From assembly GCA_977030845.1 (NCBI GenBank), contig OZ365111.1:13764001-13828000 (forward strand): DNA of 64,000 bases. The letters are read 5' to 3'. Both the position numbers and the translations under genes were made by a program. A model generated the notes under the pieces. The model had not been told where the DNA came from, did no database searches, and was given only the letters and a program-made list of their open reading frames with translations. The stretch comes from Fimbriosthenelais zetlandica (lineage: Eukaryota). Below are positions 1 through 61,613 of the stretch, piece after piece; the first letter of the stretch is position 1, and every line of letters begins with the position of its first letter.

Positions 1-3000
1 CTTTAGATACTTTTTATTATAGGGGACACCTAGACAGAACAGAGACATGATGCCTATCTGAGTCGCCAATAACAACATGAAAGTTAAAAGAAACGACCAA
101 AAGACGAAGATAGGAAAGAAAATACAATGATTACCACTGTTAACCAATTATCAATTACCTTCTGGGGCAATAAACAGACAAGGTAATTACTTAATCTATT
201 AGCTTATTCCCTCTTTTTCCTAAATGACATATTTGCCCAGCGGGATTAAGCTGCCAGCTGTAGAAGAAATAACAGAAGGAGTAATGTTTTTACCAATCTA
301 ACGAATGTCACTGTTAACACTGGGGGCAATAACTCATATTTTACCAGCAACAAGCTGCTATCTCATTTCTCACACCTCTCGGAGACAGTTTTCTAAAAAA
401 TACTATTTATAAATCAAGCTCTGTCAAGATAGAGAGAGACATTGGCCATAGGTGCAACCGGTAGACTTGTAGAGATGGGGAGGGGAGGAGGATGGACAGG
501 GGGAGGAAAGGGTGGCAAAAGCAGATCCAAAATTGGGTAGGTGTGTCCATATGGCCATTTCAGAGATGACTTTCTACTAAAATACTATTTTTGGGCCACA
601 AGGTTGAATCCCCTCATATTTTCATAGGACTGAACCCCCAACCCCTTCCTCCGAAATCCTGGATCCACCCCTGGGTGGATAAGGCTGGATGTTTGCCCCA
701 AGGCATTGAATAAAATACAGATATGAAGGAGGCAACGAGAGAGACACCTGGATGCTTGAAAAACAAGCAAAAACTCCACCCCCCAACATCAGTACTGATT
801 CACAGCTTGGCTGAGACCATCATTTACCCCTGCACTTGATCTTTAATTGAATACCGATAAAAGTATGACATATTTCACCCTGCCCCAGTGACAGCGCTGG
901 AATGTGATCCATTAGGGGGCCTGTCAGGGGTTCTTGATAAACCTATCCCTACAAATGTGAACCTGCTTTGAGGAAGACATTTTTATAATTTTTTTAAGCA
1001 AGGAAAGGTGGGTGAAGAATGAGCACCTGGTCGGGATTGGGAGTTTGGGATGTGATATGTAATTGCTGGTCTATCCCAGGGTTAAACGGGGAACCATTTT
1101 TAACCCATGTATTTTCAGAAATAACCAGGTAAATAAAATGAACTCGATATGTATCTGCCCATAATGAACGTAAAAGAATATAGAGAAGTCATAGACGATG
1201 CTCTCTGAGACATAGATTAGAACCAAGCCAGAAATCGTATAGGGTCTCTGACCATGGCATGTCTCCATTCCTCCTTACCCAGGCTGCTGCCATAGAGTTA
1301 GCCATACATGTTAGACATGCTGTAATTCTCTGACGTGCATGTTAATGAGGGCAGACATGTATGTGATGATTGTCATGAATAGTAATGAGACTGTCATGAA
1401 TAATAATGAGTCTCCTCCCCCTGATGAAGAGGGACATTGGCCTTCATTCACCAAAATTTTACCCTCCGCTTTCCTCTATTCTCACTGTTCTTCCACAGTG
1501 TAATACAGATGTATACATATGCATGTCAAGGCATAAAAGAAAGCACAACTATTTAGAAAACAATTTGATGCTCTTTATTTTGTTTAGTGTCATATAGCCG
1601 AAGATAATAAATTCAATAACAATATCTGTTTACCAAGCAGAACTCCAAATATCTGAGCAATTGTTCATTGTGCGCAGAAACTATAAGCGATAATCCAAAG
1701 GGAAGTTTCACCTTACACTTTTTGCACTCTCAGAACTTGTGACACATTTTAGATACATTATCAATGACAAAACAATAAAGCGATATCTATGGTGCCATGG
1801 ACTTGAAAGTACAGACAAAACAAGTACATTATTTACCTGAAAGTCATGGATGTCAGCTGATAGCTATAAGCAATTGCAGATTGGTGAGTGCTGGCTAGCT
1901 TATGGGCGGGAGTTGGTAAAAACAAAACTAACATACTAACATGGAGATAGATCTGTACATGTAGCTTTAATTAAAAATATTTTAATCAACAATGAACATA
2001 TATCATCAGAGATATGGCATATGTAGGTCGGGTCTCTGACTTCGGCCCATATCAATAATGTCCAGTCCCCACCAACTGCTCATTGAGAAGCAGTGAGGTA
2101 ATAATGCCAGCTTTCTCCACAGTTCCTAACCCAAGATAAAATATCACCAGATCAAAGGGCCCGCTCTCCTGATACGACCTCCACTTGTGCATTGTGCGGT
2201 TCCTTTAATGTAGTAAAAATATCAAGATAAGACCGGGCCCTTATCTCGCCTCTCTTCTCCGGCTCTCTAAACTCTCTCGACCCAATCCAATCATATCTCC
2301 CACCCCAGTCTCCATCCCTATGTTTTTATCTCGAAATTCAGGAAAAAACTGCACCGGATATTTCCTTCCTTCTTGGCACATCTTATGTGAATGTGAAAAT
2401 TTAAATAAACGTTCCATTTCAATAAGATAAGAACAATTGAATAACAAAATAATTCAGGCTTTTCCACTTGGCGAGTTTGAACACTTTCAAGTGGAGAAGT
2501 CTAATGACCAATTGAGAATAAAATACGTTGAAACTGGTTCATTTTTTGACATGGATTTGTAAAACTGAAGACTAATGGGCAATGTTACTCAACATGTGTT
2601 TCGCGCTTGTAAATTGCTGAATCTTGCATGGATCCATGACTAAGATGTTGGGGAGCACACAACATTAGATACAGGTCCCATCTCTATGGGTGGCCTTACT
2701 TTTTTAACCTAAGTAATAGGCATCAGATGTGATACATCCTTGTGATGCAAGGACACATCCATCAAAGTTATCAATTTACTTTTCTTGTCGTCAATTTCTT
2801 TCTTTCTCCCTCTCCTCCATTCCCTTCTCACCCTCACCTCGATCTATGCTATTTTTGCCTCTCCTTCCCATTCATTTTATTACTCCGGTTTATTTGGGGT
2901 GAGCCACCAACAAAGCATCTGTGACATGATCCCATAGTGTAAATCTGGGGTGGGGATGTAATCCAATTATCTCTCGAGTATGATGTATCATATATGTTAA

Positions 3001-6000
3001 CATCTATACTCCATGTGTTAATATGGGACATGCCTGTGAGAGATATCAACTTCAAAGGAAACATCCAAGTACTCCAAACATGATAATATTATGAATGCTT
3101 GAGCAAGGACCATTTTACTCCTCTTTGTTTTTTTCTCACATCCAACATTCTGCGAACCTGATATTTCCCATATTTATGGAAAAATTAAAACATAAATACG
3201 TGTATCAAAATAAATACAACTTAGAGATAACCCTCCTGCTTATCACATTATTTGATATGATTGTATTATCTAAATCACTATTAATAGATTCAATTTTCTA
3301 TTATGAAACCAGCTGGTAAAACCATCAACACTCTGTCGCCAGCTCGTACAGTTAAGTGCGTTCCAACGGTCCGAAATAATTTAATATGGACTATTTTTTT
3401 AATTGATTCATTTCCATTGAGCAAACAATATCATTGACATTTCATAACTGACAGTTAAATAATGTAAACACGAAATTTTGACCTGAAAGGGGTTTAAGGC
3501 TCTTGTAATAACATTTCAAGACCACCTGGTCCATGCACCTGGCTTTACGGTTGGCATTCCTCATTTTACTTCCATTTTCAATGTAAGACAATTTTTCATT
3601 GACATTTTTCATTCAGCATCAATTCTTGATTGCCAATTGTAACAATTATTAAATTTTGAGAGCATTCATAATGGAACTTGTAAATGCAACATCATGGCTA
3701 ATGAATTCTTTTATTTCAAAAAGGTAAATTAGGTTTGGCTAAGATTTATCACCATGCATTCAATTTTACTCTCCTTCATTAATGGTGACTACATAGAAAT
3801 ATTTAAAAAGAAAAATAACTATTTATTTTATTAATTTAAGTCATCAAGGATGCCAACAATTAATTCCCTTATAATTTATAGATCACAAGGATATGACCCC
3901 TTCTAATAAAGCATTATATAACAGCCCAGTGGGGATCCGCTTTGTGCGATCCCCCTTTGTTTGGAACTATTATAGTAACAATAGTGCTCCCCCATAAATA
4001 TAGTGGACGGACTAATTTGCATGGGCCATAACTTATGCTGGTGACATGGCCTAACATGTTAAATGTTCATGTCAAACAAGATCAAAGCATTCGGCAGCTT
4101 CCTAACCACTTTGATGGGATGGGTCGGTCAGGGGGAACCTTATCTTCCCATGACGGGGCAGGTATTTGCTTAAAGCCCGACTATAACAACCTTATTAGCT
4201 TTGTCTCTACAGGTCAGATTGGTCACTGGGTCGGGTCAAGGAGCTGTGGGGTCAAGGGTGGTTCCAGTTAAAATTGGACGAAATCTTCATTTCATATAGG
4301 CTACAGATTCTGAATTCAAAATGCAACCATGCGACGATGCATAGGCCTAATTGAGGTAACTGTACTGAAATTTAATTAAATTTTATAATTTGGACGATGA
4401 TCAAAGGTCATTCATATAAGATTAAATGGTCACTTTTAGGAATAATTAATGTGGGCCTATATTATATAGTTTAGGTCCGTTGAACTCCTGCTCTTTCGAA
4501 TCAACATAAGAAAGGACGCTGGGACTGCTCTGCATGGAAGGAATAAAATGTATCACATTCACCCACATGCACTGATTGAATTCAGGGAAGAAAGAACATG
4601 ACCAAATACAATTTACAGACATAGCTACCTCCCCAATCCGTCAGTCTTCAGACTGAAATCCAATTTTATGACCCAAGGTAGGATAGGGGTCCATTCACGA
4701 ACATGGAAACCCCAAACCTATCAAGGTCACACTGGACAAGGCATTATTTGTCAACCCAACATACTGCATGGAAAGGAAGAAATTTCTTGAAATCTTGAAG
4801 AACTTCATATTCGAACAGAATAAAGAATGTATTTTTTTTAGTATGGGAGGGAGGGGCGGGTGGCAGAGGTGTGAGAGAAAAGAGAAAGAGACCAGGGAGA
4901 GAGAGAACAGATTGAGGATTGTGGCAGGTCGCCATATCAGCCACGTGTGCGTGTATTGGCGCCTGTTATCACCATTTGGAGCCCTGCTCTGCTCTCTCTT
5001 ATCTATTGAGGGCCGCATTCCTAGAGGTGTGGCGAGTCGCTCAAGGTGTTGCCCAGCAGAAACTCGAGCAACTCGATCCCCATTATGAGCAACTCCTGCT
5101 GTCAGGTGCGGATCGGTCAGCTGGCCATGGGGTGGGGGTTGTGGGGAGGGACGAGGGGATATTCAGACAGAAGGCATTGTATGGGTGAATGAATGGGTGA
5201 ATTCGTACCAGTATGAGATGCAAAGTATAACCCAAAAGTGTTTTGGTTTGGAACTTTTTCTTTAGGAAAATGTAGCAAAAATTCAGAAATAATTTGTCAT
5301 GGTCCATGGAAATATCCATTTTAAGTTAAAAGTCACTAAAAAATTTACCCCAATATCATGAATAATGACTTTTCCCTCCGATCATTGTTGTGGGCGTGGG
5401 TGGTGGGTAGGGGGGTTAGGTAGGTGGGGATGAAGAATGCACTAGCAATGGGGGAAATGGGAATAACTGCTGGCTGCTTTTGATGTTAACCCATACAAAC
5501 ATTTTTTCTTCCAGACTAGGGGGACTCGTACGCAGCATATCCACAGTTATCTGACAACCTCCCACCACATAAAATATCACCTGTGATACACCTGGCCATC
5601 AAATCACACCTCTGTATCATATATATCTAAGATTGCCACAAGTGTGTTTACTTTTCATTAGTCAGTAACACTGCAAAGAAAGCCACTAAAGTTAAGTGTA
5701 TTGCTCGATCTATGCATATAGTGTTTAGCGTTTCCATCTGTACTTGAATGATGGACTCGTACTTGATGACATAGCATAATTAGCTAAAGATAGTTAACCT
5801 AATTGCATCATCTCCATAGGTGGGTTTCCATTTTTTGGTATATAGGCCTAACAAGTTCCGTTATTTTACGAAATCCATCTTCAGTTTATTCGCAAATAAT
5901 TTCCGATATTCCTTACCTGGTAATAAACTGATCCTTACATTGTAATAAACTGATCTATATAGGCCTATTTTTGCCAAGCTTTTATAAACTTTCTAAGTAC

Positions 6001-6899: not shown

Positions 6900-9800
6900 G
6901 TGAAAACCCAGGTTTTTTTCTTGCGGCACATACAACGTTATTGCCATATGCTCAAATCCAAACTATCCTGAACTCAGTATGTGTCTCTGGTAGTATTTCT
7001 CTCAGCCTTGATTGATTTAGCTGTCGGTTTTTTTGGCCTGCAGTCATGCAATGGAGCATTGTGTCAAGGACCTTGAGTGTTTCTTCTGATCAGAGTGACA
7101 GCTGGTGGCCATACTAAAGGTGGATCTTAATGAAGCCCTCCATCTTAACTCAGTGTCAACTTTCCTCCTGCTTCTCTCCACCTCAACACGTGGTGGTAAT
7201 TCCAATCAGTGGGGGTTACAAAGATGAGGATTGTCAGGGAAGACGTTGTGGGTATTTGTCAATATTTTTTTCTCAATATGTTCCGAGAATATTTGGGTCC
7301 TCAAATAAAAAATATTTAACTTTTAGGAAAGCAGTACAAGATGTAAACTACCCCACGTATTTGGTTCTTTTTGCCTTAGTTTCCCTTATGAAAGTCGGGG
7401 AGTGAATCTGCAAGGAAGCTCTGAATTCAGTTCTTTCATGTGGCCTGAACTACCAAGACCTAAAATTCTGTCCACAATAGTTCTACCGGGGCTACAGAGA
7501 AAGACAAAAGACAAGGACGGAAATACAGGATGACCTCCAAAGCCACATATAAATTCTACTTGGAAGATTAATCTTAAAATTATAAAAATTAATTTCACAT
7601 CAAAACAAAACACTTTTATAATGCCCTCAGTCAGCTATATAGGTGCAGGACTGTGGATGAACTTTTGGGTGGGACATTGCCTCCAGTATAAACCGGGGTA
7701 ATGGCAGCTGAGTAACGACTGGCCCAGATCCATGTTTATTTCATGTAGATGTCCCGTTGGCTCTTCCTTCATCCCTCTTTATTGAATCAGGTGGGCTGGC
7801 ATACCATAAACTCCTGGTGCATCCTTCCGTGTACACCTTGTCCTCAAAACATATCAAGAATGCACTAAAGAGAATGGTGCCAACTTTTTTTTCTGAACCA
7901 CAAAATACTTTCAGTGGGATTTGCTTGGCTTTTTTCCTACTCATTCTGAACCACAATGATATGGAGATGTTTTATCCTCTTGACTTTTTTTCAGGCCAGG
8001 TCCTGACCACCAATAGTGATCATGAGAATCAGTGCAAAATGACTGAGATTGACTCATTCCAAATGTCATCGATTTAAAAAAAATTGGTCAGTTGGTTCTT
8101 TTCTTTGTATATTTGGTAACCTATTGCTAGTCACTGCCTGGGAACAATGATATAGCAAGTCAAAAATATGGAAAAACACTGTTTGTAGCCATAACCTTGA
8201 GTGAATCCACTGTGGTTACGCATGAGTTGGCAGCTCATCTCAAGGCTTTTCAGCGTCCGCCTGGGTACAGATGTTATACCTTGGCTTAGGGCGGGCACAC
8301 AAATGCTATTGTATCAGCTATTTTGTTACTTCCCCATGGCAAATACAGCTTGTTGTCGACCTCCAAGGTTCACCGGGACTAGTTCAAACAGTGCGAGCAA
8401 ACATCTCCAGTCCCCAAATCTAGCAGGGACAATCGTGCTGGTGTCAGGTACGTCACCTTTCTCATTTATCCATCAATGTGTGATCCACCAAAACAATCTC
8501 CACGCTACTGGTACCATTCAGAAATAGAAAAAAGCTTCACAGATATTTTTCTTCATTGAGTGTGGAAAGTGGGGTTCATTGCGAAGGTATCATTGCAACT
8601 GCCAAGATGGAAACCTAAGGCATTTCTATAACAATAATGAATATTGTTGCTCAAACATGAATGATTCTATTCCAAATTAATGTCAATTTCTGAGAAAAAA
8701 CGTCATACAAAATGGTTTCTTCGACCGTAGTGATGAAAGTGTCTCATAAAAAGTTATCATGAAAAGGAAAAACTGTAATACATGTACTTAACTGTGAACT
8801 GTTGGTAGTTGTGAAATTCTAGTAAGAAAGATGAAGCAACATCCCGAGGACTCTGTTGCAAATAATGTTATTGGCTCAATAGGAATTTCTCTTTATATTA
8901 AGGATAATTTTGGAGGCAGTAGTGATGTATGTAGTAATACTGTAGCCTACAAAGTCTTTCTTTGCCTTTGGTATATGACTCTACTAACTTTGATAATGTG
9001 TAACTATCAATGCGCATCCACTCTCTCTTAGTCAATACACATCATTTGAATTACTTCAGAGAATACCTCATAGGAAAAGATGCCACCGGAAGGAGTGAAA
9101 GTTGAAAAGCTAGCAAGGTAAAGTGAGAAAGCGCTTGGGGATTCTTTGCTCCTCGCACTGACCCTCGTCTAAGCAGCTGACTTTTTGCCAGTTTTTCCTG
9201 GTTTGTGTTATTTGCGCGTCCCACACTCCGTTTCTGGTATTGGATTACCGGGTGTTTGGCGGTGGGAGGGCCCGGTGATGCCTCCCCCTTGTCATGTCCA
9301 TGTAAACATGGAGTACACCCTGCCACACACCAATGTGGATTGTTGTGCCGGCCCAGTCTTTGATAATGCTTACCTTTCGTGGGGTATCATAGTCAGAGGT
9401 GCATGAGACTTGGCACTATTTAACGTGGTGAGGGTAGGGGGACTCACCTCACTTAACTAACAACTCTTCCAACTTACAAAACTTTTTAACCTCTTTCACT
9501 AGTTTCCTATTCAATTATACAATACTGTATAAAAAAAACACAGGAGTGATTCTTTGCTCTCCCAAAATTGAGTTTGCCAGTGCTAAGGAGCGCTATCAAT
9601 GAAGCCCATTCAACGGTATGGATGGGTGTCAATCCAAAATTACGTAATGTCAATTTGCTACAGATTTGCCGTTCAGTATAAGGCAGTGCTAAACATGTAT
9701 AGGGGCTATTCAAAAATTCCGTAACACCGTTTTGCTCCAGAACCTCTGTGACACTAGACGTATAAAGCAATGCTCCCCTTTCCACTTCCAGTTACGTAAT

Positions 9801-51375: not shown

Positions 51376-54300
51376 AGTTTGAGGACCTTGTCCTTCCCCC
51401 CGCTAGCCACTCGTTGACCATCAGGACTCCAGTCTACAGCAAACACCTCGTCAGCGTGGCCGGGCAGGTCGTGCAGGAGTTTCTTAGTTTGTATGTCCCA
51501 CACCTTGAGAGTGGAGTCCGCGCTGCCACTACATAATAGACGACTGTCAGCCGACCAGGCTACCTGATAACACTGCTGAACGTGGCCTCTCAACGACGCT
51601 ATGTATCTAAAAGAAAGAGAAAAGAAATTAATATAAATTATTTTTAAAATTTAAAGTAATTTCTCAGAATAAACCGATTTTGATTAGGTAAATATACCTG
51701 GGAAAAAGATAGATGTGAGCTAAATATAATCCAAGATGAACCGACCGGTAATATCTTGAGTCACTCAAGCCATATTCTTACATATATGCTATGTAAGAAT
51801 ATGAACCATGAATTAACATTGAGATTCTTCATAAGGATGTGAATAACAGAGCAAAACCATCGTAAAGAAGAGAAATCTTGCTTAATTAATCTTGAAAAAA
51901 TAGTTCAACAACTATGTACAATTGGAATATGTCTTGTAGGTATAGGATATTGAGTTCTTTTACCCGGCAATTACTTATGGATTTGAAAATCGATTTCCCA
52001 TGGATTTATTTATAATATTTGATAATATACTTACTTTCCAGTGCGGCCATCCCATATTTTGACAGATTTATCAAAGGAAGCGCTGGCCAGGAGTCTGGCA
52101 TCGGGAGAGAAGAGGACCTCGTTGATGAGCTGGGAGTGTCCAGTCATCCTGGCTACGGGTTTCTTATCATTCTCAGGCGTCCATAGAATCAAGGTGAAGT
52201 CGTCAGACCCCGAAACCAGGCGCTCAACGTCATTCTTCTGATCATAAAAACATCAACAATTTTATTGAAAATTTCGAATGGAATAACAGAGAGAAGATTA
52301 AGTATCTAAAATTAGTAAAATCTGACATTAGGATATACGACAGAGCTATAACAGCTATATTTAAACTTTGGTTATGAATTAGATCTGGATTCATAGATTC
52401 ATTCAAAAAGACACCTCATCTGTCTGGTCTGACTGAGGAAAGCACTCCATACATGTTCGATCCACTAATCTAATAGAAAATAATTAGAATGGAGAGGAAA
52501 AGAATAACAAACCTTGGTAGAGTCATATCTTCCTTTTGCCTTCATCTGAAGTTCATCAGCTGAAAAATTCATGATTATTTAATAATGACGTTGAAGTATT
52601 TTTCAAATAATGCTCTTGACAAATGAAAAAATTATTTATATAAATGGCTCAATTAAAACTAAAAGGCATAGTACATCGATGAAAAGTTCTTACGTGTGTC
52701 AGTAACATCTTTGTAAACGATGGATGCCTTGGCTGGATCGAAAGCACCAGTTCTCATAACATAGTCTGTACTTAGAGCTAATGTATTAATCCAATGACCA
52801 TGGCCTTGTAGTGTACGACATAGCATTCCCTAAAGACAGAGGAAGAGACTCAAATTAAACTTGAACCGAAATAATCACCGACTGATTCAGATTATATGTA
52901 CAATGACTTTCAAATCAAAGAACGAATCCTATCCGAGAAAATTGGAACGGCTGGATTTATGTCTCATTTTTCTTTTTAAAAACTTGTTCAGTAAAATCAT
53001 TGTATTGTTTTCTACGATATTTCAAGAACTGTCATAATAAGAAAGAAGCTTACATCGTCAGCTTTCCACACTTTGATGGTCCGGTCCTGTGAGCCTGTAT
53101 ATAGGAGGTTTGTACCTCCCCATTTGATACAAGTCACAGACTGTAAATGTCCAGACAAAACTATTTTACATTGTCCTAAGACTGTGTCCCATATCCTAAC
53201 TGTTGCGTCCTGAAAGAAAACAAAGTTCATGAGATACATTCAACTATGAATAGTGGATATTTAATTACGCAAAGAATATTTTCTATTCCAAAATAAATAA
53301 ATATATTGCGGTTCAATGATTTACTTACTTTTGAAGAGCTTGCTAGTAACCTTGACTCTCCATCTCTGCAGAAGAAATAAGAGATCCATTAGGAAAACAC
53401 AGTTAAAGGCAACAGATTTCCCTGAAAAATTATATCGAATTAGTTTGATTCATAAATTATTTCTGTGTATACTTACAAATGTAGGGGTTTCCAAGCTAAA
53501 GCTGTTATCCATTGTGTATGCCCTGTCAATGTTTTACCTAATTGCTTTCCTGTGCTCGGATCCCAGATACAGATCTAGGAGAGAATGCCACAATATAAGT
53601 CTTGAAAATAGTGTATAGATTTTTGATACTTTGGACAAAAAATATTTTAATAGCGCAGAAAATATCATTATTAGGCCTAGACTCATTCAACACTCACTTG
53701 ACTCTTTTTACATCCAGAAGCTAATTTTTGACCATTTGGAGACCAGGCGATACAGAGAACCCAATGCTGGTGTCCTACAAAGAAAAGAAGCCAATTTGTC
53801 CCAGAAGTTAAACATAATAAAACCATGAGTGAATTGTGCTTATAATAGGCAACATATGAAGCCCACCTTTGCATGTAAACTGTGGAGTTTCCGTGTTCAC
53901 ATCCCAAAACCGAACTGTTGTATCTCCAGATCCGCTAGCCAAATACCTAGAAAAAAATTTAGCCAGTGGTTCGGTTAAAGCGTTTCAACCATAGTGAGAG
54001 TGAAAAGGAGATTCTAAATTGCATCGATATTTTTCCTATGGTACCTAGCATGCCTAGTATCACTGATACACTGGGCGAATATTGAAATTGAAATTTGAAT
54101 GCTACACTATCATACATAGGCTTCAAGGACTGTGACATACCTTCCATCTGGACTGAATGCCACTGATATAACTGCCTCTGCGTGGCCCTCTATTGTACTC
54201 GTACATCTAGTAACAGCTCTCACTTTGAACACAGCTTGAGGTTGATAGAGAATCTCCAAAACATCTTCAGATCCTTCAAGGATCTTTGGATCCAGACTCT

Positions 54301-54748
54301 TGGCAAGGGTTTCAGTAATCTCAGCCTCATTGACAAAGAAGGAATAGGGCGTACTTTCCTCCTGAAAATTTACGGGAAAATCTCTTAAACTTAAACCTTG
54401 AACTTGTTGAACTAAAGTGGACCGGAGAACAAAAATTCGAAAAATATTTTTTAAATTTAGGTCTACTGTGTCTAGTGTAGGCATGTTAGTTACTGTGGGC
54501 ATGTATGATCCCACATAATATTGAAATATAAAATACATGTAGGCCTATAAGAACTTGACTCTCGGACACCAATAACATTTAGTTAAAAGACTTACATTTT
54601 GTAATAAAGCGTTGCAAACAAGCTGCAATTTTTCAGCAGTTATATCAACAGGCAAATCAAACGGAGCTCCAGTTGTTTCACCAGATTCCGATTTAAATAC
54701 ACACAACAATCTCTTGTCGGTTTTCCCGGGTTCCTCAGTATTCTCCAT
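51376..54748 (-). CDS. NLE1: Notchless protein homolog 1 (Rsa4; NLE/UBL domain + WD40 repeats; pre-60S assembly factor)
   Basis: Exons 54748-54596, 54361-54141, 53946-53867, 53774-53698, 53574-53477, 53365-53329, 53209-53054, 52829-52694, 52559-52513, 52237-52035, 51606-51376. All are GT-AG with consistent phases, total 1439 nt (479 codons + 2 nt). Diagnostic peptides: [88 protein letters not shown]. Untranslated exon donor at 55011 (GTGAGT). The terminal few codons were not located. Confidence 0.96.
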
Positions 54749-55010
54749 AGCGGCACAGTTCAAGACAACACCTGAAGAATTTTAGACGAAGTACAGAATA
54801 TAAATTCAAGTTGAGCGTCTAGACTAAATAAATCGCATCTATGATGAAGCAATATCAAAAAGTAAACAAACCCTATTATCGCCCAGGCCAAAGCCGTGAA
54901 AAATAGCATCAACGAAAGAACATGTACTCAACAGTCAAATACCTATATAAATTCAGAAACCTCGAACATAATTAAACAACAAAAACACTAACGGAATGTA
55001 TTTAACTCAC

Positions 55011-55200
55011 TCTGTTCCTATGGGAGAGAAAATAACTTGGAATTTCTGGAGCAAGCTTCTTTCACACGTGCGGCTGCATTAATTCCTCTACAATCCGCTA
55101 GTCGCTGAACTGGCAGCACTTTCCGGTGTCCAACCGGAAGTCAATTTTTAGCCACTTCCGACAAGCATTGGGCTTGTGTGTCCTTGAAGTAAGTAATATT
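55011..55200. promoter_or_regulatory. Bidirectional promoter shared by NLE1 and MRPL18
   Basis: Start codons are 452 bp apart and divergent. ETS/GABP-type motifs ACTTTCCGG 55118-26, CCGGAAGT 55134-41, ACTTCCG 55154-60; E-box CACGTG 55065-70. Confidence 0.7.
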
Positions 55201-58200
55201 ATGGCTTTACGATTGATCCCCAAGGTTTTCCCAACAACGCTGTCTACAGTTTCACACTTCAGTGCATCCAGAGCCTCCAGAGTCCATGGTGCTTTTATTA
55301 CAGGTAAGATTTTATAAATAAATTCGTGCACATTTAAACCGGCGTGGGCGATAATTGATGAATCGGGCTATTAATATTATCGGTAGGCATCAAAATAGGA
55401 CTTCATTCTCCCTTACATTCTTTCAGTATGGCGAGGGACATATAGGCATAGTTCAACAACAGCTGACGATTCAAGGGAAGTGTCAAAAGTGAATAACGAT
55501 GTTGTTAATCCCGAGTTCATAAATAGGAACCCAAGGTAAGCATTTCCTGTTTTTTTTTATTTGCCAGTTTTAGTTTTGCCCATGCTAATACTATTGCTAA
55601 TACTATTCTAATTAATGAATTAATGAATATCCATGGGATAGGCTTGCTAGATAACCACTGATAAGTAGGCATGGGACTTAACTCTAGATCCATTAATTAG
55701 AATTAGCACAAAACATAAATATAACAATGTACTATAAATTTATTGCAGAAACCTGGAAAGAATGGGTATCGCGAGGAAATCCAAGGGCTGGATGTTTCAG
55801 TATCCATCTAAAGCTTTTTACCACAGGTAGGATAACTGATTCCCTTCTATTTAATTACGATAAACTAAATAAATTCTCATTATTCTACAATAGCTGAAAT
55901 ATAAAAATAATATGATATCAGTACGCCTGGGAATAACAGGCTAAAATTCAGGATATTAATTCTGATCAGATTTAAGAGCGCCATTTGCATTTGCAATTAT
56001 GGCCGCCTGAGAACAAACTCTTTACGGTACCAGGACATTTTGGAAAAAGTGAGAAAATCAGGACATTTAGAAAAATGCATAAACGACCAAGATGCTACAG
56101 CTACGCACAATACTAGGCCTTATGCCTACTTAGTACCGTACTATCGGTATTATTTTTATGTCCTTAGATTAAGATTTGAATCCACTAATCGGCACACCAT
56201 GGGATGGGTCGAACATTGTTCTGGACGAACTGTTGTTATTGCTTCAACCAACGAGTTCTCCATTGGCAAACACCTCTATAGGTAAGTTTTCACTATCTTC
56301 ATCATTTAGACATTCTTTATTGATCATATTTTTTTGGATTAACGTATATTGTCAGATCATCTGAATATGCGTTTAGTGCAATGGAGCACGCCCGTGTCTC
56401 CATGGCTATATCACGGGGAGAGGGAGTCATAGTAACTCTAGTGACGTCATGGCGCGTCATTCCAACGCTCTCCGCCTAACTCACACACCGCACTAGAGTT
56501 GGAGAAAAACTTTTTATTGGTTTTTAATAGTTTTTCATCGTCCGAATATGGGCAAAAGAAAGGAAAGGCTTTGTGCGAAGTGTGGCGTACGTCACCCCAA
56601 ACCTACGGGGACCAAATGTACTCGAAATGCGGAGTTTGATCCAGTTTTGGACGCGGATAATCCCAGGTTCACCACCCAGCCTGAGGATTCGGAATCGGTC
56701 GTCTCATTAGGAACTGAGTGTGACGAGAAAGAAGTGGAAGACGGGGGGAAAGAGAAGCGTATGGAGAAGCGATTTGAGACTTTGGAATTATTGGTGCAGA
56801 AAATATCCAAAGTGGTTCTTGAAGATAAAAAGGGGTTACCAGATAGGCCTACGTCAAGTGACTCGTCGCGCAGCTCCAGCCACTCCACCGTCCGACGTTC
56901 CCGTAGGCATAGCCATACTAGGTCTAGAGCTAGGCCTACTCATCATAGATCTCACTCTACCAGCCGCTCTTCTTCTCGTTCCCGTTCAAAGTCAAGATCA
57001 AGGAAAGATAGGAGGAGAAGAAAATACTTCTCACAATCCAGACATCTTGACAGAGGTGAGCAAATCAGCTCTTTCGAACAGTTAATGGTGGCAACTTTTA
57101 AAACTATTCGTGACATGCACGAAGATGGCAAGGCGATTGATGGTATGATTAGTCACGGGCTCACGTTGGCAGAAAAAGCTGCCACAGCCTCATATATGGA
57201 TCGTGCTTTTGTTAGCTACGATGCGGCTGTTAGAAAGAGGGCATCGACCGTCGGATCATCTGCTTTCGGCCAGCCTAACAATGAAGATGTGATCAAATAC
57301 TTCTCGTATGATAACTCCCGTAAAGCATCAGCGTCAGAGAGGGGGATGTCAGAGAAGGGGAAAGCTGCCAACCACAAGAGTTTTAGAACATGTTTTAGGT
57401 TTAATTCTGAAGCCGGGTGTCATGCAAAGCATTGTGTTTATACTCATAGGTGTAGCGGTTGTAAATCAGATGGTCATAGCGTAAAAGATTGCAAAGTGGA
57501 CAAATCCAAAAGCAAATAGGATTCGGCCTGTGAGGGGGAAGTTGGTTGCCTTGCAATCAGGGACCCGGATAAGGTTATGAACTGGTCCCCGGCTTCTCAA
57601 GATGGTTCTCTTGAGGTCCCGTGTGTCGAGGAAACTCCCAGCCCTTCACAGCCTCCACTTTGCATGATCCCGGTAAATGACACTACTGGTAATTGCTTGG
57701 ATAACTTGTTAGTCAGCAAAGAAATTGATGTTAGTTTAGGTAGTGGGTTAACTCCGGAATTTGCCCTTTCTGTACCCGGTATTCATCAAGTTGATGTTGA
57801 CGTTGACACGGTATTATTTACTACTGATGTTTCGCCCGCTGGCGCTTGTATTACTGTTTATAAGGCTTGTGCTCTTGGAATTTGTAAATGTGCATTTAGC
57901 CTAGACGGCATTGTAAGTCAGTTGAAACCTTGTCGCTTTGCGTATTTATTGTATGGTTGTATTAATGATCCATGTTTGCACATAGACATGTTTACTGGCA
58001 TAGTCGATGGTTTTAAGGTTGTTGATACTGATAGTGTTGTTACTGTTAGGGGTTATGACCAGCCCAACTACAAATCAATCTTATCTAATGACAACAAAGG
58101 AAAAATGAGTAAGATTGTTAGCAAGGAGCTAAATGAAGGTTTCATATCTATCAGTGACTCTAAACCGAGATGCATTCACTCACTGGGTGCAGTTCCAAAA

Positions 58201-60809
58201 GGAGATGGGTCAATCAGGCCCATCACGGATTGTTCCCGTCCCGCTGGTTTATCTATTAATGATCATTGCTCCTCCTTGGCTCAAAAATTTTGTTACAATG
58301 GGGTACATTCAGTAGTGGACATCCTCCAACCAAATGAGTTTATGAGTGTAATTGACATCCAGTCAGCGTACAGGTCAGTGCCCATCTATCCCCAGCACAG
58401 AGACTTGTTGGGATTTAGGTGGGAGTACAATGGTGAAGAGTTGTTCTTCAAGGATAACCGTTTATGTTTTGGTATGGCCACAGGCCCATACTATTTCCAC
58501 AGTATATCCTGTTTTGTTGGAGATGTCCTAACCCAGTGCTTTGCCATCCGGAATGTCCATTACTTGGACGATTATATAACTATCTCGGAGTCCCGTGATG
58601 CATCTCTGCGTGCTCAGTTGACTGTGATTAAATTACTGAGATACCTAGGCTTCCATGTATCCTGGAAGAAAGTTACTGCCCCTTCACAATCCGCTACTTA
58701 CTTGGGCATAATTATTGACAGTAGTAAGATGGAACTCCGATTGCCTGATGAAAAAGTGGTGAAAGTAAAGGAATATATATCAAAGTATGTATCAGCCAAA
58801 TATATTTCCAAACATGAACTTGAGAAATTGAACGGCCTACTCTCCCATGCCAGCCAAGTGGTGAAGGGTGGCAGGATTTTCACGAGACGTTGCTACAATA
58901 CATACAAAGATTTAATACACTCCAGAAGGCGACGTGTGAAAATCTCCAATGGGATGAGGGAGGATCTCCAGTGGTGGCATCGCTTTTGTCCCGTATTTAA
59001 TGGCAAAGCAATCATACCTCATGAGGTCCATGACACTTTCTTAGTGACAGATGCATCCTTACGTGGTTTTGCTGCGATCTATGGAGAACAATGGATTGGT
59101 GGTTTCTGGAACAAGTCAGACTGGTGCTTAGCCTATGACGGCTGTGATCATTCAGCCCCCTCACCGGACTTAGATGAAGAGGCTCTTAAGAACATTAATG
59201 TGTTAGAGTTGTGGGCCATTGTCGCTGGTGTGGAACATTGGGGCCATTTGTTTAGAGATAAAATTATCCAGATCTGGACTGATAACCGTCAAGTTATGTG
59301 CATGCTACGAAACAATGCCAGTGTTAATCCCATATGTATGGGTTGGCTGAGACGTCTCTTCTGGTTCGCAATGTTTTACAATCTTCGTTTTGATTCGAAC
59401 TACATCTCTACCCATGACAATGTGGCTGCTGATACCATTTCCCGCCTTGCCTACAGTAACGTCAAACGTTCAATTTCTGAGAAATTACAGCCCTACAAAC
59501 TTTGCTGTGGTGATAAACTCATCTCTGATGTCTATTCCAGGTATGGGGAATTTGGAATCTAAAGTAACCCATCTGCGCCTTCAATCAGTCTCATCGGCAA
59601 CTAGGAGACTTAGAGAGCAGCAGTGGTCATGTTATGTGAAGTTTTGTAGGGTTCACCGCATGGACCCTCTACCCTGCACAACACAAACAATTTGTTGTTT
59701 TATTGCATCACTTTCTGACTCAATGAAGTATTCGTCGATTGTCACATACATTCAAGGCTTGAAATTTTACCATGTGGTGCATGGATTACAGCCACCTGAT
59801 TTAAATCACCCTCACATTAAATCAACTTTAGCTGGTGTGAAGAAGACCCTAGGCTCGGCACAGAGTCAGAAAGAGCCCCTTCTACCATTGCACCTTGTAA
59901 AGATGTCTAAATATGTTAGTTCTTCGGACAGTGTGTTATTTCTGGTGTGGACTGGGTTGCTTTTAATGTTCAGATGCCTACTGAGAGTGGGTAAAGTGGT
60001 GATTTCAGAGCATACCCTGACTAGAGGAGACATTGAATTCACTGACTATGGATTGAGATTAAGAATTCAGTCATCAAATTGCCCATTTAGACATTCTTTA
60101 TTGATCATATTTTTTTGGATTAACGTATATTGTCAGATCATCTGAATATGCGTTTATCTCCCCAAATTTTATGTATAGCAACTAGTGAAAGTAAACGCAA
60201 TATTTGATCTAAAATCTATAAACCTTTATTTAACAGTTTCATTGATGTTTCTGCTGCGGAGAATGTGGGACGGATTTTGGCGGAGCGTTGTCAGAAATCT
60301 GGAATTACTGTCATGTCGAACTTGGAACCAGAACACGGGAACAAATCGGAGAAGGTAAACTAATTCAAGGATTCCTCGGTGTTATTATCTGTAACATTTG
60401 TGATTCTAAAGGAACTTCTATACTAGTGATACACAGTATTATTGGAAATAGCAAGTAGAATTTCTTTTTAAAAAGGCGGTGGCGAATTAAGAGGAATATT
60501 TATCAAGAAGGGTTGTATATATAGGCTTGATTTCTTTGGAATGCAGATATTTGTTTTTTTAAATTAAAACTCTTTTTATTTCTTATTCAGTATTTGGCGT
60601 TTTATGATGCTATAGTAGATGCTGGAATCTCATTAGAAGAACCAGATGAGGTATTGCCGCATTACACGCCAGGAATAAATTACGACGATCAATGGGAAGT
60701 ACAGGATCTAACTCGGAGACAACACAAAGCTAGAAGAAATCCGAGGAGGACAGTTTTCAAGTACGGAGAAAAGAAAAAGAACATCAAAGTAAAAAAATAT
60801 AGAGACTAA
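55201..60809 (+). CDS. MRPL18: Mitochondrial large ribosomal subunit protein uL18m
   Basis: Exons 55201-55303, 55427-55535, 55749-55826, 56168-56281, 60237-60354, 60591-60809 (741 nt, 246 aa), GT-AG with consistent phases. Basic presequence MALRLIPKVF...; signature NPEFINRNPRNLERMG, ASTNEFSIGKHLYS, AAENVGRILAERCQKSGI, DAGISLEEP. AATAAA near 60870. Confidence 0.93.
56303..56375 (+). repeat. Left copy of a perfect 73-bp direct repeat flanking the retroelement
   Basis: CATTTAGACATTCTTTATTGATC...CATCTGAATATGCGTTTA, identical to 60084-60156. Confidence 0.97.
56548..57519 (+). CDS. Gag-like ORF1 of Ngaro/DIRS element
   Basis: 323 aa; N-terminal CAKCGVRHPKPTGTKC knuckle, Arg/Ser-rich middle, C-terminal CFRFN...C...C.YTHRCSGC...GH...DC Cys/His fingers. 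Confidence 0.88.
   Translation: MGKRKERLCAKCGVRHPKPTGTKCTRNAEFDPVLDADNPRFTTQPEDSESVVSLGTECDEKEVEDGGKEKRMEKRFETLELLVQKISKVVLEDKKGLPDRPTSSDSSRSSSHSTVRRSRRHSHTRSRARPTHHRSHSTSRSSSRSRSKSRSRKDRRRRKYFSQSRHLDRGEQISSFEQLMVATFKTIRDMHEDGKAIDGMISHGLTLAEKAATASYMDRAFVSYDAAVRKRASTVGSSAFGQPNNEDVIKYFSYDNSRKASASERGMSEKGKAANHKSFRTCFRFNSEAGCHAKHCVYTHRCSGCKSDGHSVKDCKVDKSKSK
57577..59562 (+). CDS. Reverse transcriptase / RNase H ORF2 of Ngaro/DIRS element
   Basis: 661 aa; RPITDCS, DIQSAY, RLCFGM..GP, YLDD, YLGIIID; RNase H motifs TDAS, NINVLEL, TDN, NVAADTISR. Confidence 0.95.
   Translation: MNWSPASQDGSLEVPCVEETPSPSQPPLCMIPVNDTTGNCLDNLLVSKEIDVSLGSGLTPEFALSVPGIHQVDVDVDTVLFTTDVSPAGACITVYKACALGICKCAFSLDGIVSQLKPCRFAYLLYGCINDPCLHIDMFTGIVDGFKVVDTDSVVTVRGYDQPNYKSILSNDNKGKMSKIVSKELNEGFISISDSKPRCIHSLGAVPKGDGSIRPITDCSRPAGLSINDHCSSLAQKFCYNGVHSVVDILQPNEFMSVIDIQSAYRSVPIYPQHRDLLGFRWEYNGEELFFKDNRLCFGMATGPYYFHSISCFVGDVLTQCFAIRNVHYLDDYITISESRDASLRAQLTVIKLLRYLGFHVSWKKVTAPSQSATYLGIIIDSSKMELRLPDEKVVKVKEYISKYVSAKYISKHELEKLNGLLSHASQVVKGGRIFTRRCYNTYKDLIHSRRRRVKISNGMREDLQWWHRFCPVFNGKAIIPHEVHDTFLVTDASLRGFAAIYGEQWIGGFWNKSDWCLAYDGCDHSAPSPDLDEEALKNINVLELWAIVAGVEHWGHLFRDKIIQIWTDNRQVMCMLRNNASVNPICMGWLRRLFWFAMFYNLRFDSNYISTHDNVAADTISRLAYSNVKRSISEKLQPYKLCCGDKLISDVYSRYGEFGI
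59543..60145 (+). pseudogene. Tyrosine recombinase ORF3, truncated after ~180 aa and running into duplicated host intron
   Basis: ATG at 59543 overlaps the end of ORF2. SAM-like N-terminus (W..YVKFC....PLP), then FRCLLR (first catalytic Arg); it ends at LRIQSS where SKT, HxxR and the catalytic Tyr would follow. The tail RHSLLIIFFWINVYCQII* is encoded by the 73-bp duplication. Confidence 0.88.
60084..60156 (+). repeat. Right copy of the 73-bp direct repeat
   Basis: Identical to 56303-56375. Confidence 0.97.
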
Positions 60810-61613
60810 CATTTCATTTTTCAACTTTAGATTATACATTGTATGTAGCCTAGGTACTGTATGTGAAACAATAAAGGAAATTACTTGAAATATGGATCCG
60901 ACTTCTTTCGACGTTTTCTAATTTGCCGCCTGAACGTAAGGAATATTTTATTTTGAATTTTTTTTTAACTTCCTTTCTATCCAGGCCGCACACACGTCCT
61001 GCCTTTCTATCCAGCAATTTTTTTAGATGAGATTTAGATCTATAGATAACCTATCATAGCATAGACATATTTCCCTTTCTATGTGGTATCTATGTATGTC
61101 TATGCTAGTATGATCAGGCTCGGACGTATTAGCAAAGATAGGCCTACTAATACCGGATAATAAAAGTTGACCGTCCGGTATCGCCCTCGTGACCTATACG
61201 GCAAACGAAGGAACTAAGATTTTTAATCACTTTCGGCTCCATGCGACTACCCAACCACCGGCAACTTGGGGAACGAACGCTCAATGCTAACTCAATGTAG
61301 CCTGACATCCAAGCCTCACGAGGTCCACAGACACAAACAGAACAGTTCTATGGACAGGTTTATGAAACCACCCACATGAACCAAACTTGAAATCCGTCGG
61401 TAGATTTTCATAAAGCAACAGTGGTATGCAGCTCGGAATGTTCAGACGATGTTTGTAGATTTATAGAACCACCTACATGAACCAAAATTGAAATCCTTCG
61501 GTATAGATTTCCATAAAGGATTTATTGCATCCAAAAGAACTGAGCTATTCTGGCTGTAAGCTTATACAAACAGCGAAAGATAAATACCATTAGTATCGTT
61601 GTTATTTAGCCTA

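What the first reader, a model, noticed from the sequence alone, without database searches (positions are those of the whole stretch)
56282..60236. Tyrosine-recombinase retroelement bracketed by a perfect 73-bp host duplication and cut just before the recombinase active site
Seen: structure [73 bp][element 56376-60083][same 73 bp]. Removing the element and one copy restores a 174-bp MRPL18 intron (now 3955 bp). The YR ends at LRIQSS, with no poly(A) and no 3' repeats. TCATCA occurs both at the element break (60071-76) and overlapping the start of the left copy (56299-56304), with 7 nt (AATTGCC) before the right copy. Known: DIRS/Ngaro elements integrate via YR without target-site duplications, and LINE-type retroposition truncates the 5' end. 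Inference: this copy arose non-canonically. Either element cDNA was captured at a staggered break, or a normal insertion was later broken and repaired by template switching to the empty allele 73 bp upstream. Intact gag/pol and identical repeats indicate a very recent event in an essential gene.
Basis: partly seen in the sequence, partly recalled or inferred. Interest (0 to 1): 0.8.

Follow-up and report, generated by a model that had tools for sequence, protein, structure and literature searches.

The report
Broken jumping gene with repair scar
A young Ngaro-type jumping gene sits in an intron of the mitochondrial ribosomal gene MRPL18, has lost its last ~790 bases and is followed by a second copy of 73 host bases, most likely because a normal insertion later broke and was patched from an insertion-free chromosome; it is a neat but single and unverified repair scar.

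Summary
A perfect 73-nt direct repeat (56303-56375 and 60084-60156) brackets a tyrosine-recombinase (YR) retroelement in a uL18m (MRPL18) intron. The 73-mer occurs nowhere else in the 447-Mb genome.

Three near-identical sister copies (0.16-1.0% substitutions) define the family as Ngaro-like: A1-gag-RT/RNaseH-YR-B1A2-B2, about 4.5 kb, with no target-site duplications.

- The window copy starts at the exact first base of A1, as the sisters do.
- Element homology stops at 60078, inside the YR gene. About 790 nt are missing: five of the six catalytic YR residues, plus B1, A2 and B2.
- Five unassigned bases (TTGCC, not seven) follow, then a contiguous piece of empty-site sequence.

Best reading (about 0.55): a canonical YR insertion was later broken in its 3' part. 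The break was repaired by copying 73 nt past the insertion point on an insertion-free template, then end joining. Capture of cDNA at a staggered break is disfavoured by the canonical 5' end.

No sequencing runs were listed, so an assembly artefact is not excluded (about 0.1). The truncation removed both sense-strand AATAAA signals, which may explain why the gene tolerates the insertion. Interest is modest. Other Ngaro/PAT-type elements were noted earlier in this genome.

The parts
56169..56281 (+). MRPL18 (uL18m) exon upstream of the interrupted intron
   Evidence: In-frame splice to the next exon. The joined peptide matches uL18m of solved mitoribosomes across the junction.
56282..60236 (+). 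MRPL18 intron, 3955 nt now and 174 nt without the insertion and one repeat copy
   Evidence: GT...AG boundaries read; arithmetic.
56303..56375 (+). Left copy of the 73-nt host repeat (original flank)
56376..56519 (+). A1 terminal repeat of the element (144 nt), starting at the canonical first base
   Evidence: Identical to the A1/A2 repeats of sister copies. The same first base GTGCAATGG... follows unrelated flanks in the C10 and C19 copies.
56548..57519 (+). gag-like ORF, 323 aa, Cys/His-rich C-terminus
   Evidence: Same length as in the C10 copy. No Pfam hit.
57577..59562 (+). pol ORF, 661 aa, reverse transcriptase plus RNase H; no methyltransferase domain detected
   Evidence: RVT_1 2.5e-14 and RT_RNaseH 0.0017, the latter below Pfam's cut-off. 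Homologues at up to 54% identity. The nearest Atlas clusters lack Dam.
59528..60078 (+). Truncated tyrosine recombinase ORF: the first ~183 of ~318 codons counted from the ATG. It ends ...LRIQSS, just before the hairpin Lys.
   Evidence: The full frame in the C19 copy hits Phage_integrase at 2.7e-8. The alignment of the copies stops at 60078.
60079..60083 (+). 5-nt junction filler TTGCC of untraceable origin
   Evidence: Not part of the element at this position and not part of the intron. TTGCC does occur at +32 and +47 of the missing element sequence.
60084..60156 (+). Right copy of the 73-nt host repeat, contiguous with the downstream intron (empty-site sequence)
60237..60356 (+). MRPL18 exon downstream of the interrupted intron

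Best explanation
The element is a young Ngaro-like tyrosine-recombinase (YR) retrotransposon. It entered the 174-nt MRPL18 intron in the sense orientation by the normal YR route. That route joins the circle's B|A junction to the target between 56375 and the base now at 60157, and makes no target duplication.

Later, or in the same cell cycle, the insertion broke in its 3' part. The right-hand end paired with an insertion-free copy of the locus, most simply the homologue in a heterozygote. It primed synthesis leftwards across the empty site for 73 nt. The new end was then joined to the degraded left-hand end inside the YR gene by end joining, leaving 5 extra bases.

The result is [flank][A1-gag-pol-YR']TTGCC[73 nt of flank again][rest of intron].

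Shown: the anatomy, the canonical 5' end, the missing 3' part, and the empty-site continuity. Inferred: the order of events, the template, the repair pathway, and that loss of the two poly(A) signals eased selection against the insertion.
For: 1. The family's full structure comes from three sister copies. It is A1(144)-gag-pol-YR-B1(69)|A2(144)-72 nt-B2(69), 4489 nt in the C10 copy.
2. The sister copies have no target-site duplications, and their flanks are unrelated.
3. The window copy begins at the same first base of A1. It aligns to position 60078 and then lacks all downstream element sequence.
4. After TTGCC the sequence runs 56303-56375 and straight on into the downstream intron. That is exactly an empty site, so one template switch suffices.
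5. The 73-mer is unique to this locus.
6. Youth: 0.16% substitutions against the C10 copy and 0/73 between the repeats.
7. Another copy of the family (C19) carries a ~917-nt internal deletion with a 20-nt, partly templated filler. Repair-type scars therefore occur in this family.
8. Sense-strand AATAAA lies only in B1 and B2 of the full element. None is left in the window copy.
Against: - No read-level confirmation: no runs were listed.
- No empty or full-length allele of this locus is present in the assembly, so the two-step history is inferred from one allele.
- Repair from a homologue rather than a sister chromatid is the less common choice outside meiosis.
- The filler and the nearby TCATCA do not map onto a simple microhomology junction.
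- A one-step aberrant integration would give the same product.
Confidence: 0.55

Rival explanations
1. One-step aberrant integration. The recombinase inserted one strand, or completed only the first strand exchange, which made the canonical left junction. Host synthesis primed from a nick 73 nt upstream on the other strand displaced the old strand and copied the flank and the element up to position 3703. It then aborted and was ligated, with 5 extra bases, to the displaced flap that begins at 56303.
For: - It gives exactly the observed order with a canonical left end.
- DIRS-1 has been reported to amplify through linear single-stranded cDNA (PMC7192593), so single-strand intermediates are conceivable for YR retroelements.
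Against: - There is no direct evidence for such an intermediate in Ngaro elements.
- It needs a nick, aborted synthesis and flap ligation all in one event.
- The three sister insertions show no such signature.
- It cannot be told apart from the two-step model by sequence.
Confidence: 0.15
2. Assembly artefact. A chimeric join between an insertion-bearing haplotype and the empty haplotype created the truncation and the duplication.
For: - A heterozygous 4.5-kb insertion is the kind of site where assemblers err.
- No reads could be laid.
- No second haplotig is present.
Against: - The two sides of the join share no overlap that could justify a join.
- There are 5 extra bases found in neither haplotype at that position.
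- There is no N gap.
- The duplication is exact and ends exactly at the insertion point.
Confidence: 0.1
3. Capture of an incomplete element cDNA at a double-strand break with 73-nt staggered ends, or target/R-loop-primed reverse transcription that first copied intron RNA and then switched to element RNA. Either way the duplication was made at insertion, without the recombinase.
For: - 3' truncation, filler bases and a long flank duplication are all seen in repair-mediated captures of DNA.
- The TCATCA hexamer lies near both break points (P of about 0.03).
Against: - The left end is exactly A1 base 1, as in the recombinase-made sister insertions.
- By the standard models, transcripts of split-repeat elements start inside A1 and the termini are rebuilt from B1A2. 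No linear product is therefore expected to end there (PMC7192593; own knowledge of the Goodwin and Poulter models).
- The chance of hitting that base by accident is of the order of 1 in 4500.
Confidence: 0.07
4. Campbell-type reinsertion. A circle holding [73 nt flank + element 1-3703], closed by end joining, was cut out of an earlier insertion. It recombined through its 73-nt homology with an empty allele.
For: A single crossover of such a circle yields the same direct duplication around the insert (inference).
Against: - It needs more steps than repair synthesis.
- 73 nt is a short homology for crossover in animals.
- There is no independent sign of such circles.
Confidence: 0.04

Closest known systems
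Ngaro retrotransposons (tyrosine-recombinase retroelements, DIRS order; Goodwin and Poulter; definitions in PMC8547959 and PMC4157794)
   Same: In the sister copies:
[quoted passage not shown]
- No methyltransferase domain detected.
- No target-site duplications.
   Different: The window copy keeps only A1 and lacks 3' YR, B1, A2 and B2. It is bracketed by a 73-nt host duplication, which is not a feature of the family. Phylogenetic placement among named Ngaro lineages was not tested.
Synthesis-dependent strand annealing followed by end joining at transposon-induced breaks, as in P-element gap repair in Drosophila (own knowledge: Adams, McVey, Sekelsky and colleagues)
   Same: The product combines a tract newly copied from a homologous template with an end-joined junction that carries a few filler bases. 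This leaves partial deletions of the element.
   Different: Here the template would be the insertion-free homologue. The copied tract therefore duplicates flank rather than element. The break is not known to be transposase-made. Nothing was observed experimentally.
DIRS-1 of Dictyostelium (PMC7192593)
   Same: A YR retroelement whose termini are rebuilt from an internal junction sequence. Many genomic copies are fragmented.
   Different: DIRS-1 has inverted terminal repeats with an internal complementary region and a methyltransferase domain. The family here has split direct repeats and no such domain.
LINE-type target-primed insertions
   Same: A truncated retroelement copy flanked by a duplication of target sequence.
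   Different: LINEs are 5'-truncated, end in poly(A) or 3' repeats, and have short duplications. This copy is 3'-truncated, has an exact 5' terminus and no tail, and its family uses a recombinase.

Membership tests
Ngaro-like YR retrotransposon | Reverse transcriptase and RNase H in pol | tested here: met
   RVT_1 2.5e-14 passes Pfam's cut-off. RT_RNaseH is weak (0.0017, below the cut-off).
Ngaro-like YR retrotransposon | Tyrosine recombinase instead of integrase | tested here: met
   The full YR frame of the C19 sister copy hits Phage_integrase at 2.7e-8, with R..K..HxxR..W..Y motifs read. In the window copy only the N-terminal ~58% remains.
Ngaro-like YR retrotransposon | Split direct repeats A1-[ORFs]-B1A2-B2, internal repeats downstream of YR | tested here: met
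   Met in the sister copies C10, C19 and C33. The window copy has A1 only.
Ngaro-like YR retrotransposon | No methyltransferase domain (separates Ngaro from DIRS1 and PAT) | tested here: met
   No such Pfam hit in the 661-aa pol. The nearest Atlas clusters carry RVT_1 only, and Dam-bearing clusters rank far lower. Absence of a hit is weaker than a positive test.
Ngaro-like YR retrotransposon | Insertion without target-site duplication | tested here: met
   Met in the sisters: no duplication at the C10 or C19 copy, whose flanks can both be read. The C33 copy lacks its 5' end, so only its right flank is known. The window copy's 73-nt duplication is an exception and is attributed to repair.
Ngaro-like YR retrotransposon | RT/YR phylogeny inside the Ngaro clade | not tested
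Transposition-generated target-site duplication | A duplication of family-typical, fixed length at every insertion | tested here: not met
   Sister insertions have none. 73 nt is seen only here.
LINE-like target-primed retroposition | 5' truncation with an intact 3' end and poly(A) or a 3' repeat | tested here: not met
   The 5' end is intact, the 3' end is missing, and there is no tail.

The most novel reading that the evidence does not exclude
The structure records a one-step, non-canonical integration. The recombinase joined only one strand or one side of a (partly) single-stranded cDNA. Host repair synthesis from a nick 73 nt away made the second strand, stopped early, and was ligated to the displaced flap. 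That would be a natural snapshot of a single-strand integration intermediate for Ngaro/DIRS elements, whose integration chemistry has never been observed directly.
Probability: 0.12. Interest if true: 0.65.

Novelty: new member of a known kind. Interest (0 to 1): 0.3.

Why it matters
- Young YR family: it documents a very young, low-copy Ngaro-like family in an animal genome that holds well over a hundred related reverse-transcriptase copies. It also gives exact termini and shows that the family's normal insertions make no target duplication.
- Possible marker of homologue-templated repair: the rearranged copy is a clean natural example of what may happen when a heterozygous transposon insertion breaks. 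Repair from the empty homologue would leave a flank duplication plus a truncated element. If confirmed in reads and populations, such scars could mark interhomologue repair.
- Tolerance in an essential gene: the scar could explain how a sense-oriented insertion in a single-copy essential gene became tolerable, because both of the element's poly(A) signals were lost.
- Limits: as a single locus without read support, it does not change what is known about YR retroelements.

Tried and rejected
- Read support: two searches for public runs (junction only, then the whole insertion) listed none. Read laying could not be used.
- Second haplotype: the left flank matches only this locus, so no empty or full allele is in the assembly.
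- '73 bp belongs to the element's split repeat': rejected. It is absent from the sister copies and from the rest of the genome.
- Templated origin of the filler: the only 8-mer match (TTGCCCAT, reverse strand at the gag start) is at chance level. TTGCC lies at +32 and +47 of the missing element sequence (P for at least one is 0.056, for two 0.005), but without flanking microhomology, so this is unresolved.
- TCATCA as the junction microhomology: rejected as the join, because the observed junction is not ...TCATCATTTAG.... P is about 0.03, and local alignment of the two regions is no better than random (P 0.44).
- Same-chromatid replication slippage: rejected. It needs a second switch exactly at the element's right end.
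- Pre-existing tandem duplication of the intron: rejected. The insertion would have to hit its boundary exactly.
- Genome-wide screen for other truncated YR elements with flank duplications: not possible.
- Orthologue intron length in a related species: not attempted. The full protein has no reference and would have had to be typed.
- gag has no Pfam family.

Full report
**What is there.** The window holds a perfect 73-nt direct repeat at 56303-56375 and 60084-60156. There are no Ns in the region. A search of the whole 447-Mb assembly with the left flank finds the 73-mer only at these two places. It is therefore host sequence, not a transposon terminus, and far beyond chance.

Between the copies lie 3708 nt, richer in G+C than the surroundings, with three ORFs:
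- a 323-aa gag-like protein;
- a 661-aa pol with reverse transcriptase (RVT_1 2.5e-14) and a weak RNase H match (0.0017, below Pfam's cut-off);
- a third frame that ends ...LRIQSS and runs on into intron sequence.

**Host gene.** The exons at 56169-56281 and 60237-60356 join in frame. The joined peptide aligns across the junction with mitoribosomal uL18m/MRPL18 of solved structures (E 2e-14; weak Ribosomal_L18p hit). The gene is single-copy. The intron is 3955 nt and would be 174 nt without the insert and one repeat copy. The element lies in the same orientation as the gene.

**The family.** The genome has three other copies that are 99.0-99.8% identical in substitutions. Together they define the structure A1 (144 nt)-gag-pol-YR-B1 (69 nt)|A2 (144 nt)-72 nt-B2 (69 nt), 4489 nt in the C10 copy. 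This is the A1-[ORFs]-B1A2B2 split-direct-repeat layout that defines Ngaro elements (PMC8547959). Lack of a methyltransferase domain separates Ngaro from DIRS1 and PAT (PMC4157794). Here:
- no such domain is found in pol;
- the nearest Atlas clusters carry RVT_1 only;
- the complete third ORF, read in the C19 copy, hits Phage_integrase (2.7e-8);
- that ORF shows the R...K...HxxR...W...Y pattern (residue assignment is my inference from the known motif order).

At each junction that can be read, the sister copies have unrelated flanks and no target-site duplication. C10 and C19 begin with the same GTGCAATGG, and all three end with ...GGGTATAT.

| Copy | Lesions |
|---|---|
| Window | Lacks the last ~790 nt |
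| C10 | Premature stop at pol codon 637; 16-nt deletion in YR |
| C19 | ~917-nt internal deletion joined by a 20-nt, partly templated filler |
| C33 | Lacks the first 86 nt; 8-, 567- and 67-nt deletions |

A 240-nt fragment lies between (TA)n tracts on C25.

**The window copy against its sisters.**
- It starts at the exact first base of A1.
- Homology runs to 60078 and stops inside the YR gene, after Ser229 of the frame. The presumed first catalytic Arg is kept. Lys, His, the second Arg, Trp and Tyr are lost, together with B1, A2 and B2.
- Five bases follow (TTGCC, 60079-60083).
- Then comes 56303-56375 again, running without a break into the downstream intron. The right side of the junction is therefore a contiguous stretch of the empty site.

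**Mechanism.** The exact A1 terminus argues that the left junction was made by the recombinase at the B|A junction of the replication intermediate. In the standard models for these elements, transcripts start inside the terminal repeat and the ends are rebuilt from the internal junction (PMC7192593; own knowledge). No linear cDNA is therefore expected to end at base 1. An accidental hit on that base has odds of roughly 1 in 4500.

The right side needs only one event: DNA synthesis on an insertion-free template that ran 73 nt past the insertion point, then end joining to a broken end inside the element with 5 filler bases.

- Most economical history: a canonical insertion, then a break in the 3' part, then synthesis-dependent repair from the empty homologue, then end joining. 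This resembles products of P-element gap repair in Drosophila (own knowledge). One conceivable source of the break is abortive cleavage by the element's own recombinase at the internal B1|A2 junction, about 500 nt downstream. That is speculation.
- Same-chromatid slippage would need a second switch exactly at the element's end, so I reject it.
- A one-step variant gives the same product and cannot be separated by sequence. In it, single-strand or half-completed integration is followed by displacement synthesis from a nick 73 nt upstream, early stop, and ligation to the displaced flap.

**Microhomology and filler.**
- TCATCA lies at 60071-60076 and 56299-56304 as reported, but the junction is not built on it.
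- A shared hexamer in windows of this size has P of about 0.03.
- The two regions are otherwise no more alike than random pairs (P 0.44).
- The filler has no convincing template. TTGCC does occur twice within the first 51 nt of the missing element sequence, so it may be a remnant or a short templated copy.

**Consequence for the gene (inference).** On the sense strand of the full element, AATAAA occurs only in B1 and B2. The window copy has none, only two internal ATTAAA. A full-length sense insertion would have put two likely poly(A) signals and a second promoter copy (A2) into an intron of a single-copy essential gene. The truncation removed them, which may be why this allele is the one seen.

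**Caveats.**
- No public runs were listed, so the junctions have no read support.
- An assembly chimera is unlikely, because there is no overlap, there are extra bases, there is no gap, and the end points are exact. It is not excluded.
- The genome is rich in related elements: at least 129 reverse-transcriptase matches, many with open frames.
- Two earlier notes of this scan describe other split-repeat elements elsewhere in this genome.

**Verdict.** The element is an ordinary, young Ngaro-like retrotransposon, and the 73-nt duplication is best read as a repair scar. Interest is modest until reads and population data exist.

Noticed in passing
window 53680-54770 (- strand): A Notchless-type gene (NLE domain 1.4e-7, then WD40 repeats) lies head to head with MRPL18. 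The two starts are a few hundred bases apart around 54800-55200, so a shared bidirectional promoter is likely.
   Followed up: partly
L005 (G000:C19:6085000-6094999), about 8190-8211: A sister copy has a ~917-nt internal deletion closed by about 20 nt of filler. Part of the filler (GCCCGCT) repeats the sequence just after the deletion, a templated-insertion type of scar.
   Followed up: partly
L034 1501-1740 (G000:C25:20245188-20245427): A 240-nt fragment of the element's 5' region (positions 15-254) is embedded between long (TA)n microsatellites, next to short palindromic repeats.
   Followed up: no
L006 and L038 (G000:C33:898048-904864): The C33 copy lacks its first 86 nt. A 61-nt piece of the A repeat lies about 3 kb further on, as if the 5' end had been split by another insertion or rearrangement.
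   Followed up: no
L032 (G000:C10:11719315-11723247): A related family (about 80% identical) is present as an internally deleted derivative in which the B1A2 region abuts the first ~1.7 kb.
   Followed up: no
G000, whole genome: At least 129 scored matches (652 candidates) to this reverse transcriptase at 32-67% identity, many with long open frames. The genome carries many lineages of YR-type retroelements.
   Followed up: no
window 61356-61500: Two 44-nt direct repeats 101 nt apart (86% identical) lie downstream of MRPL18; probably part of another repeat family.
   Followed up: no
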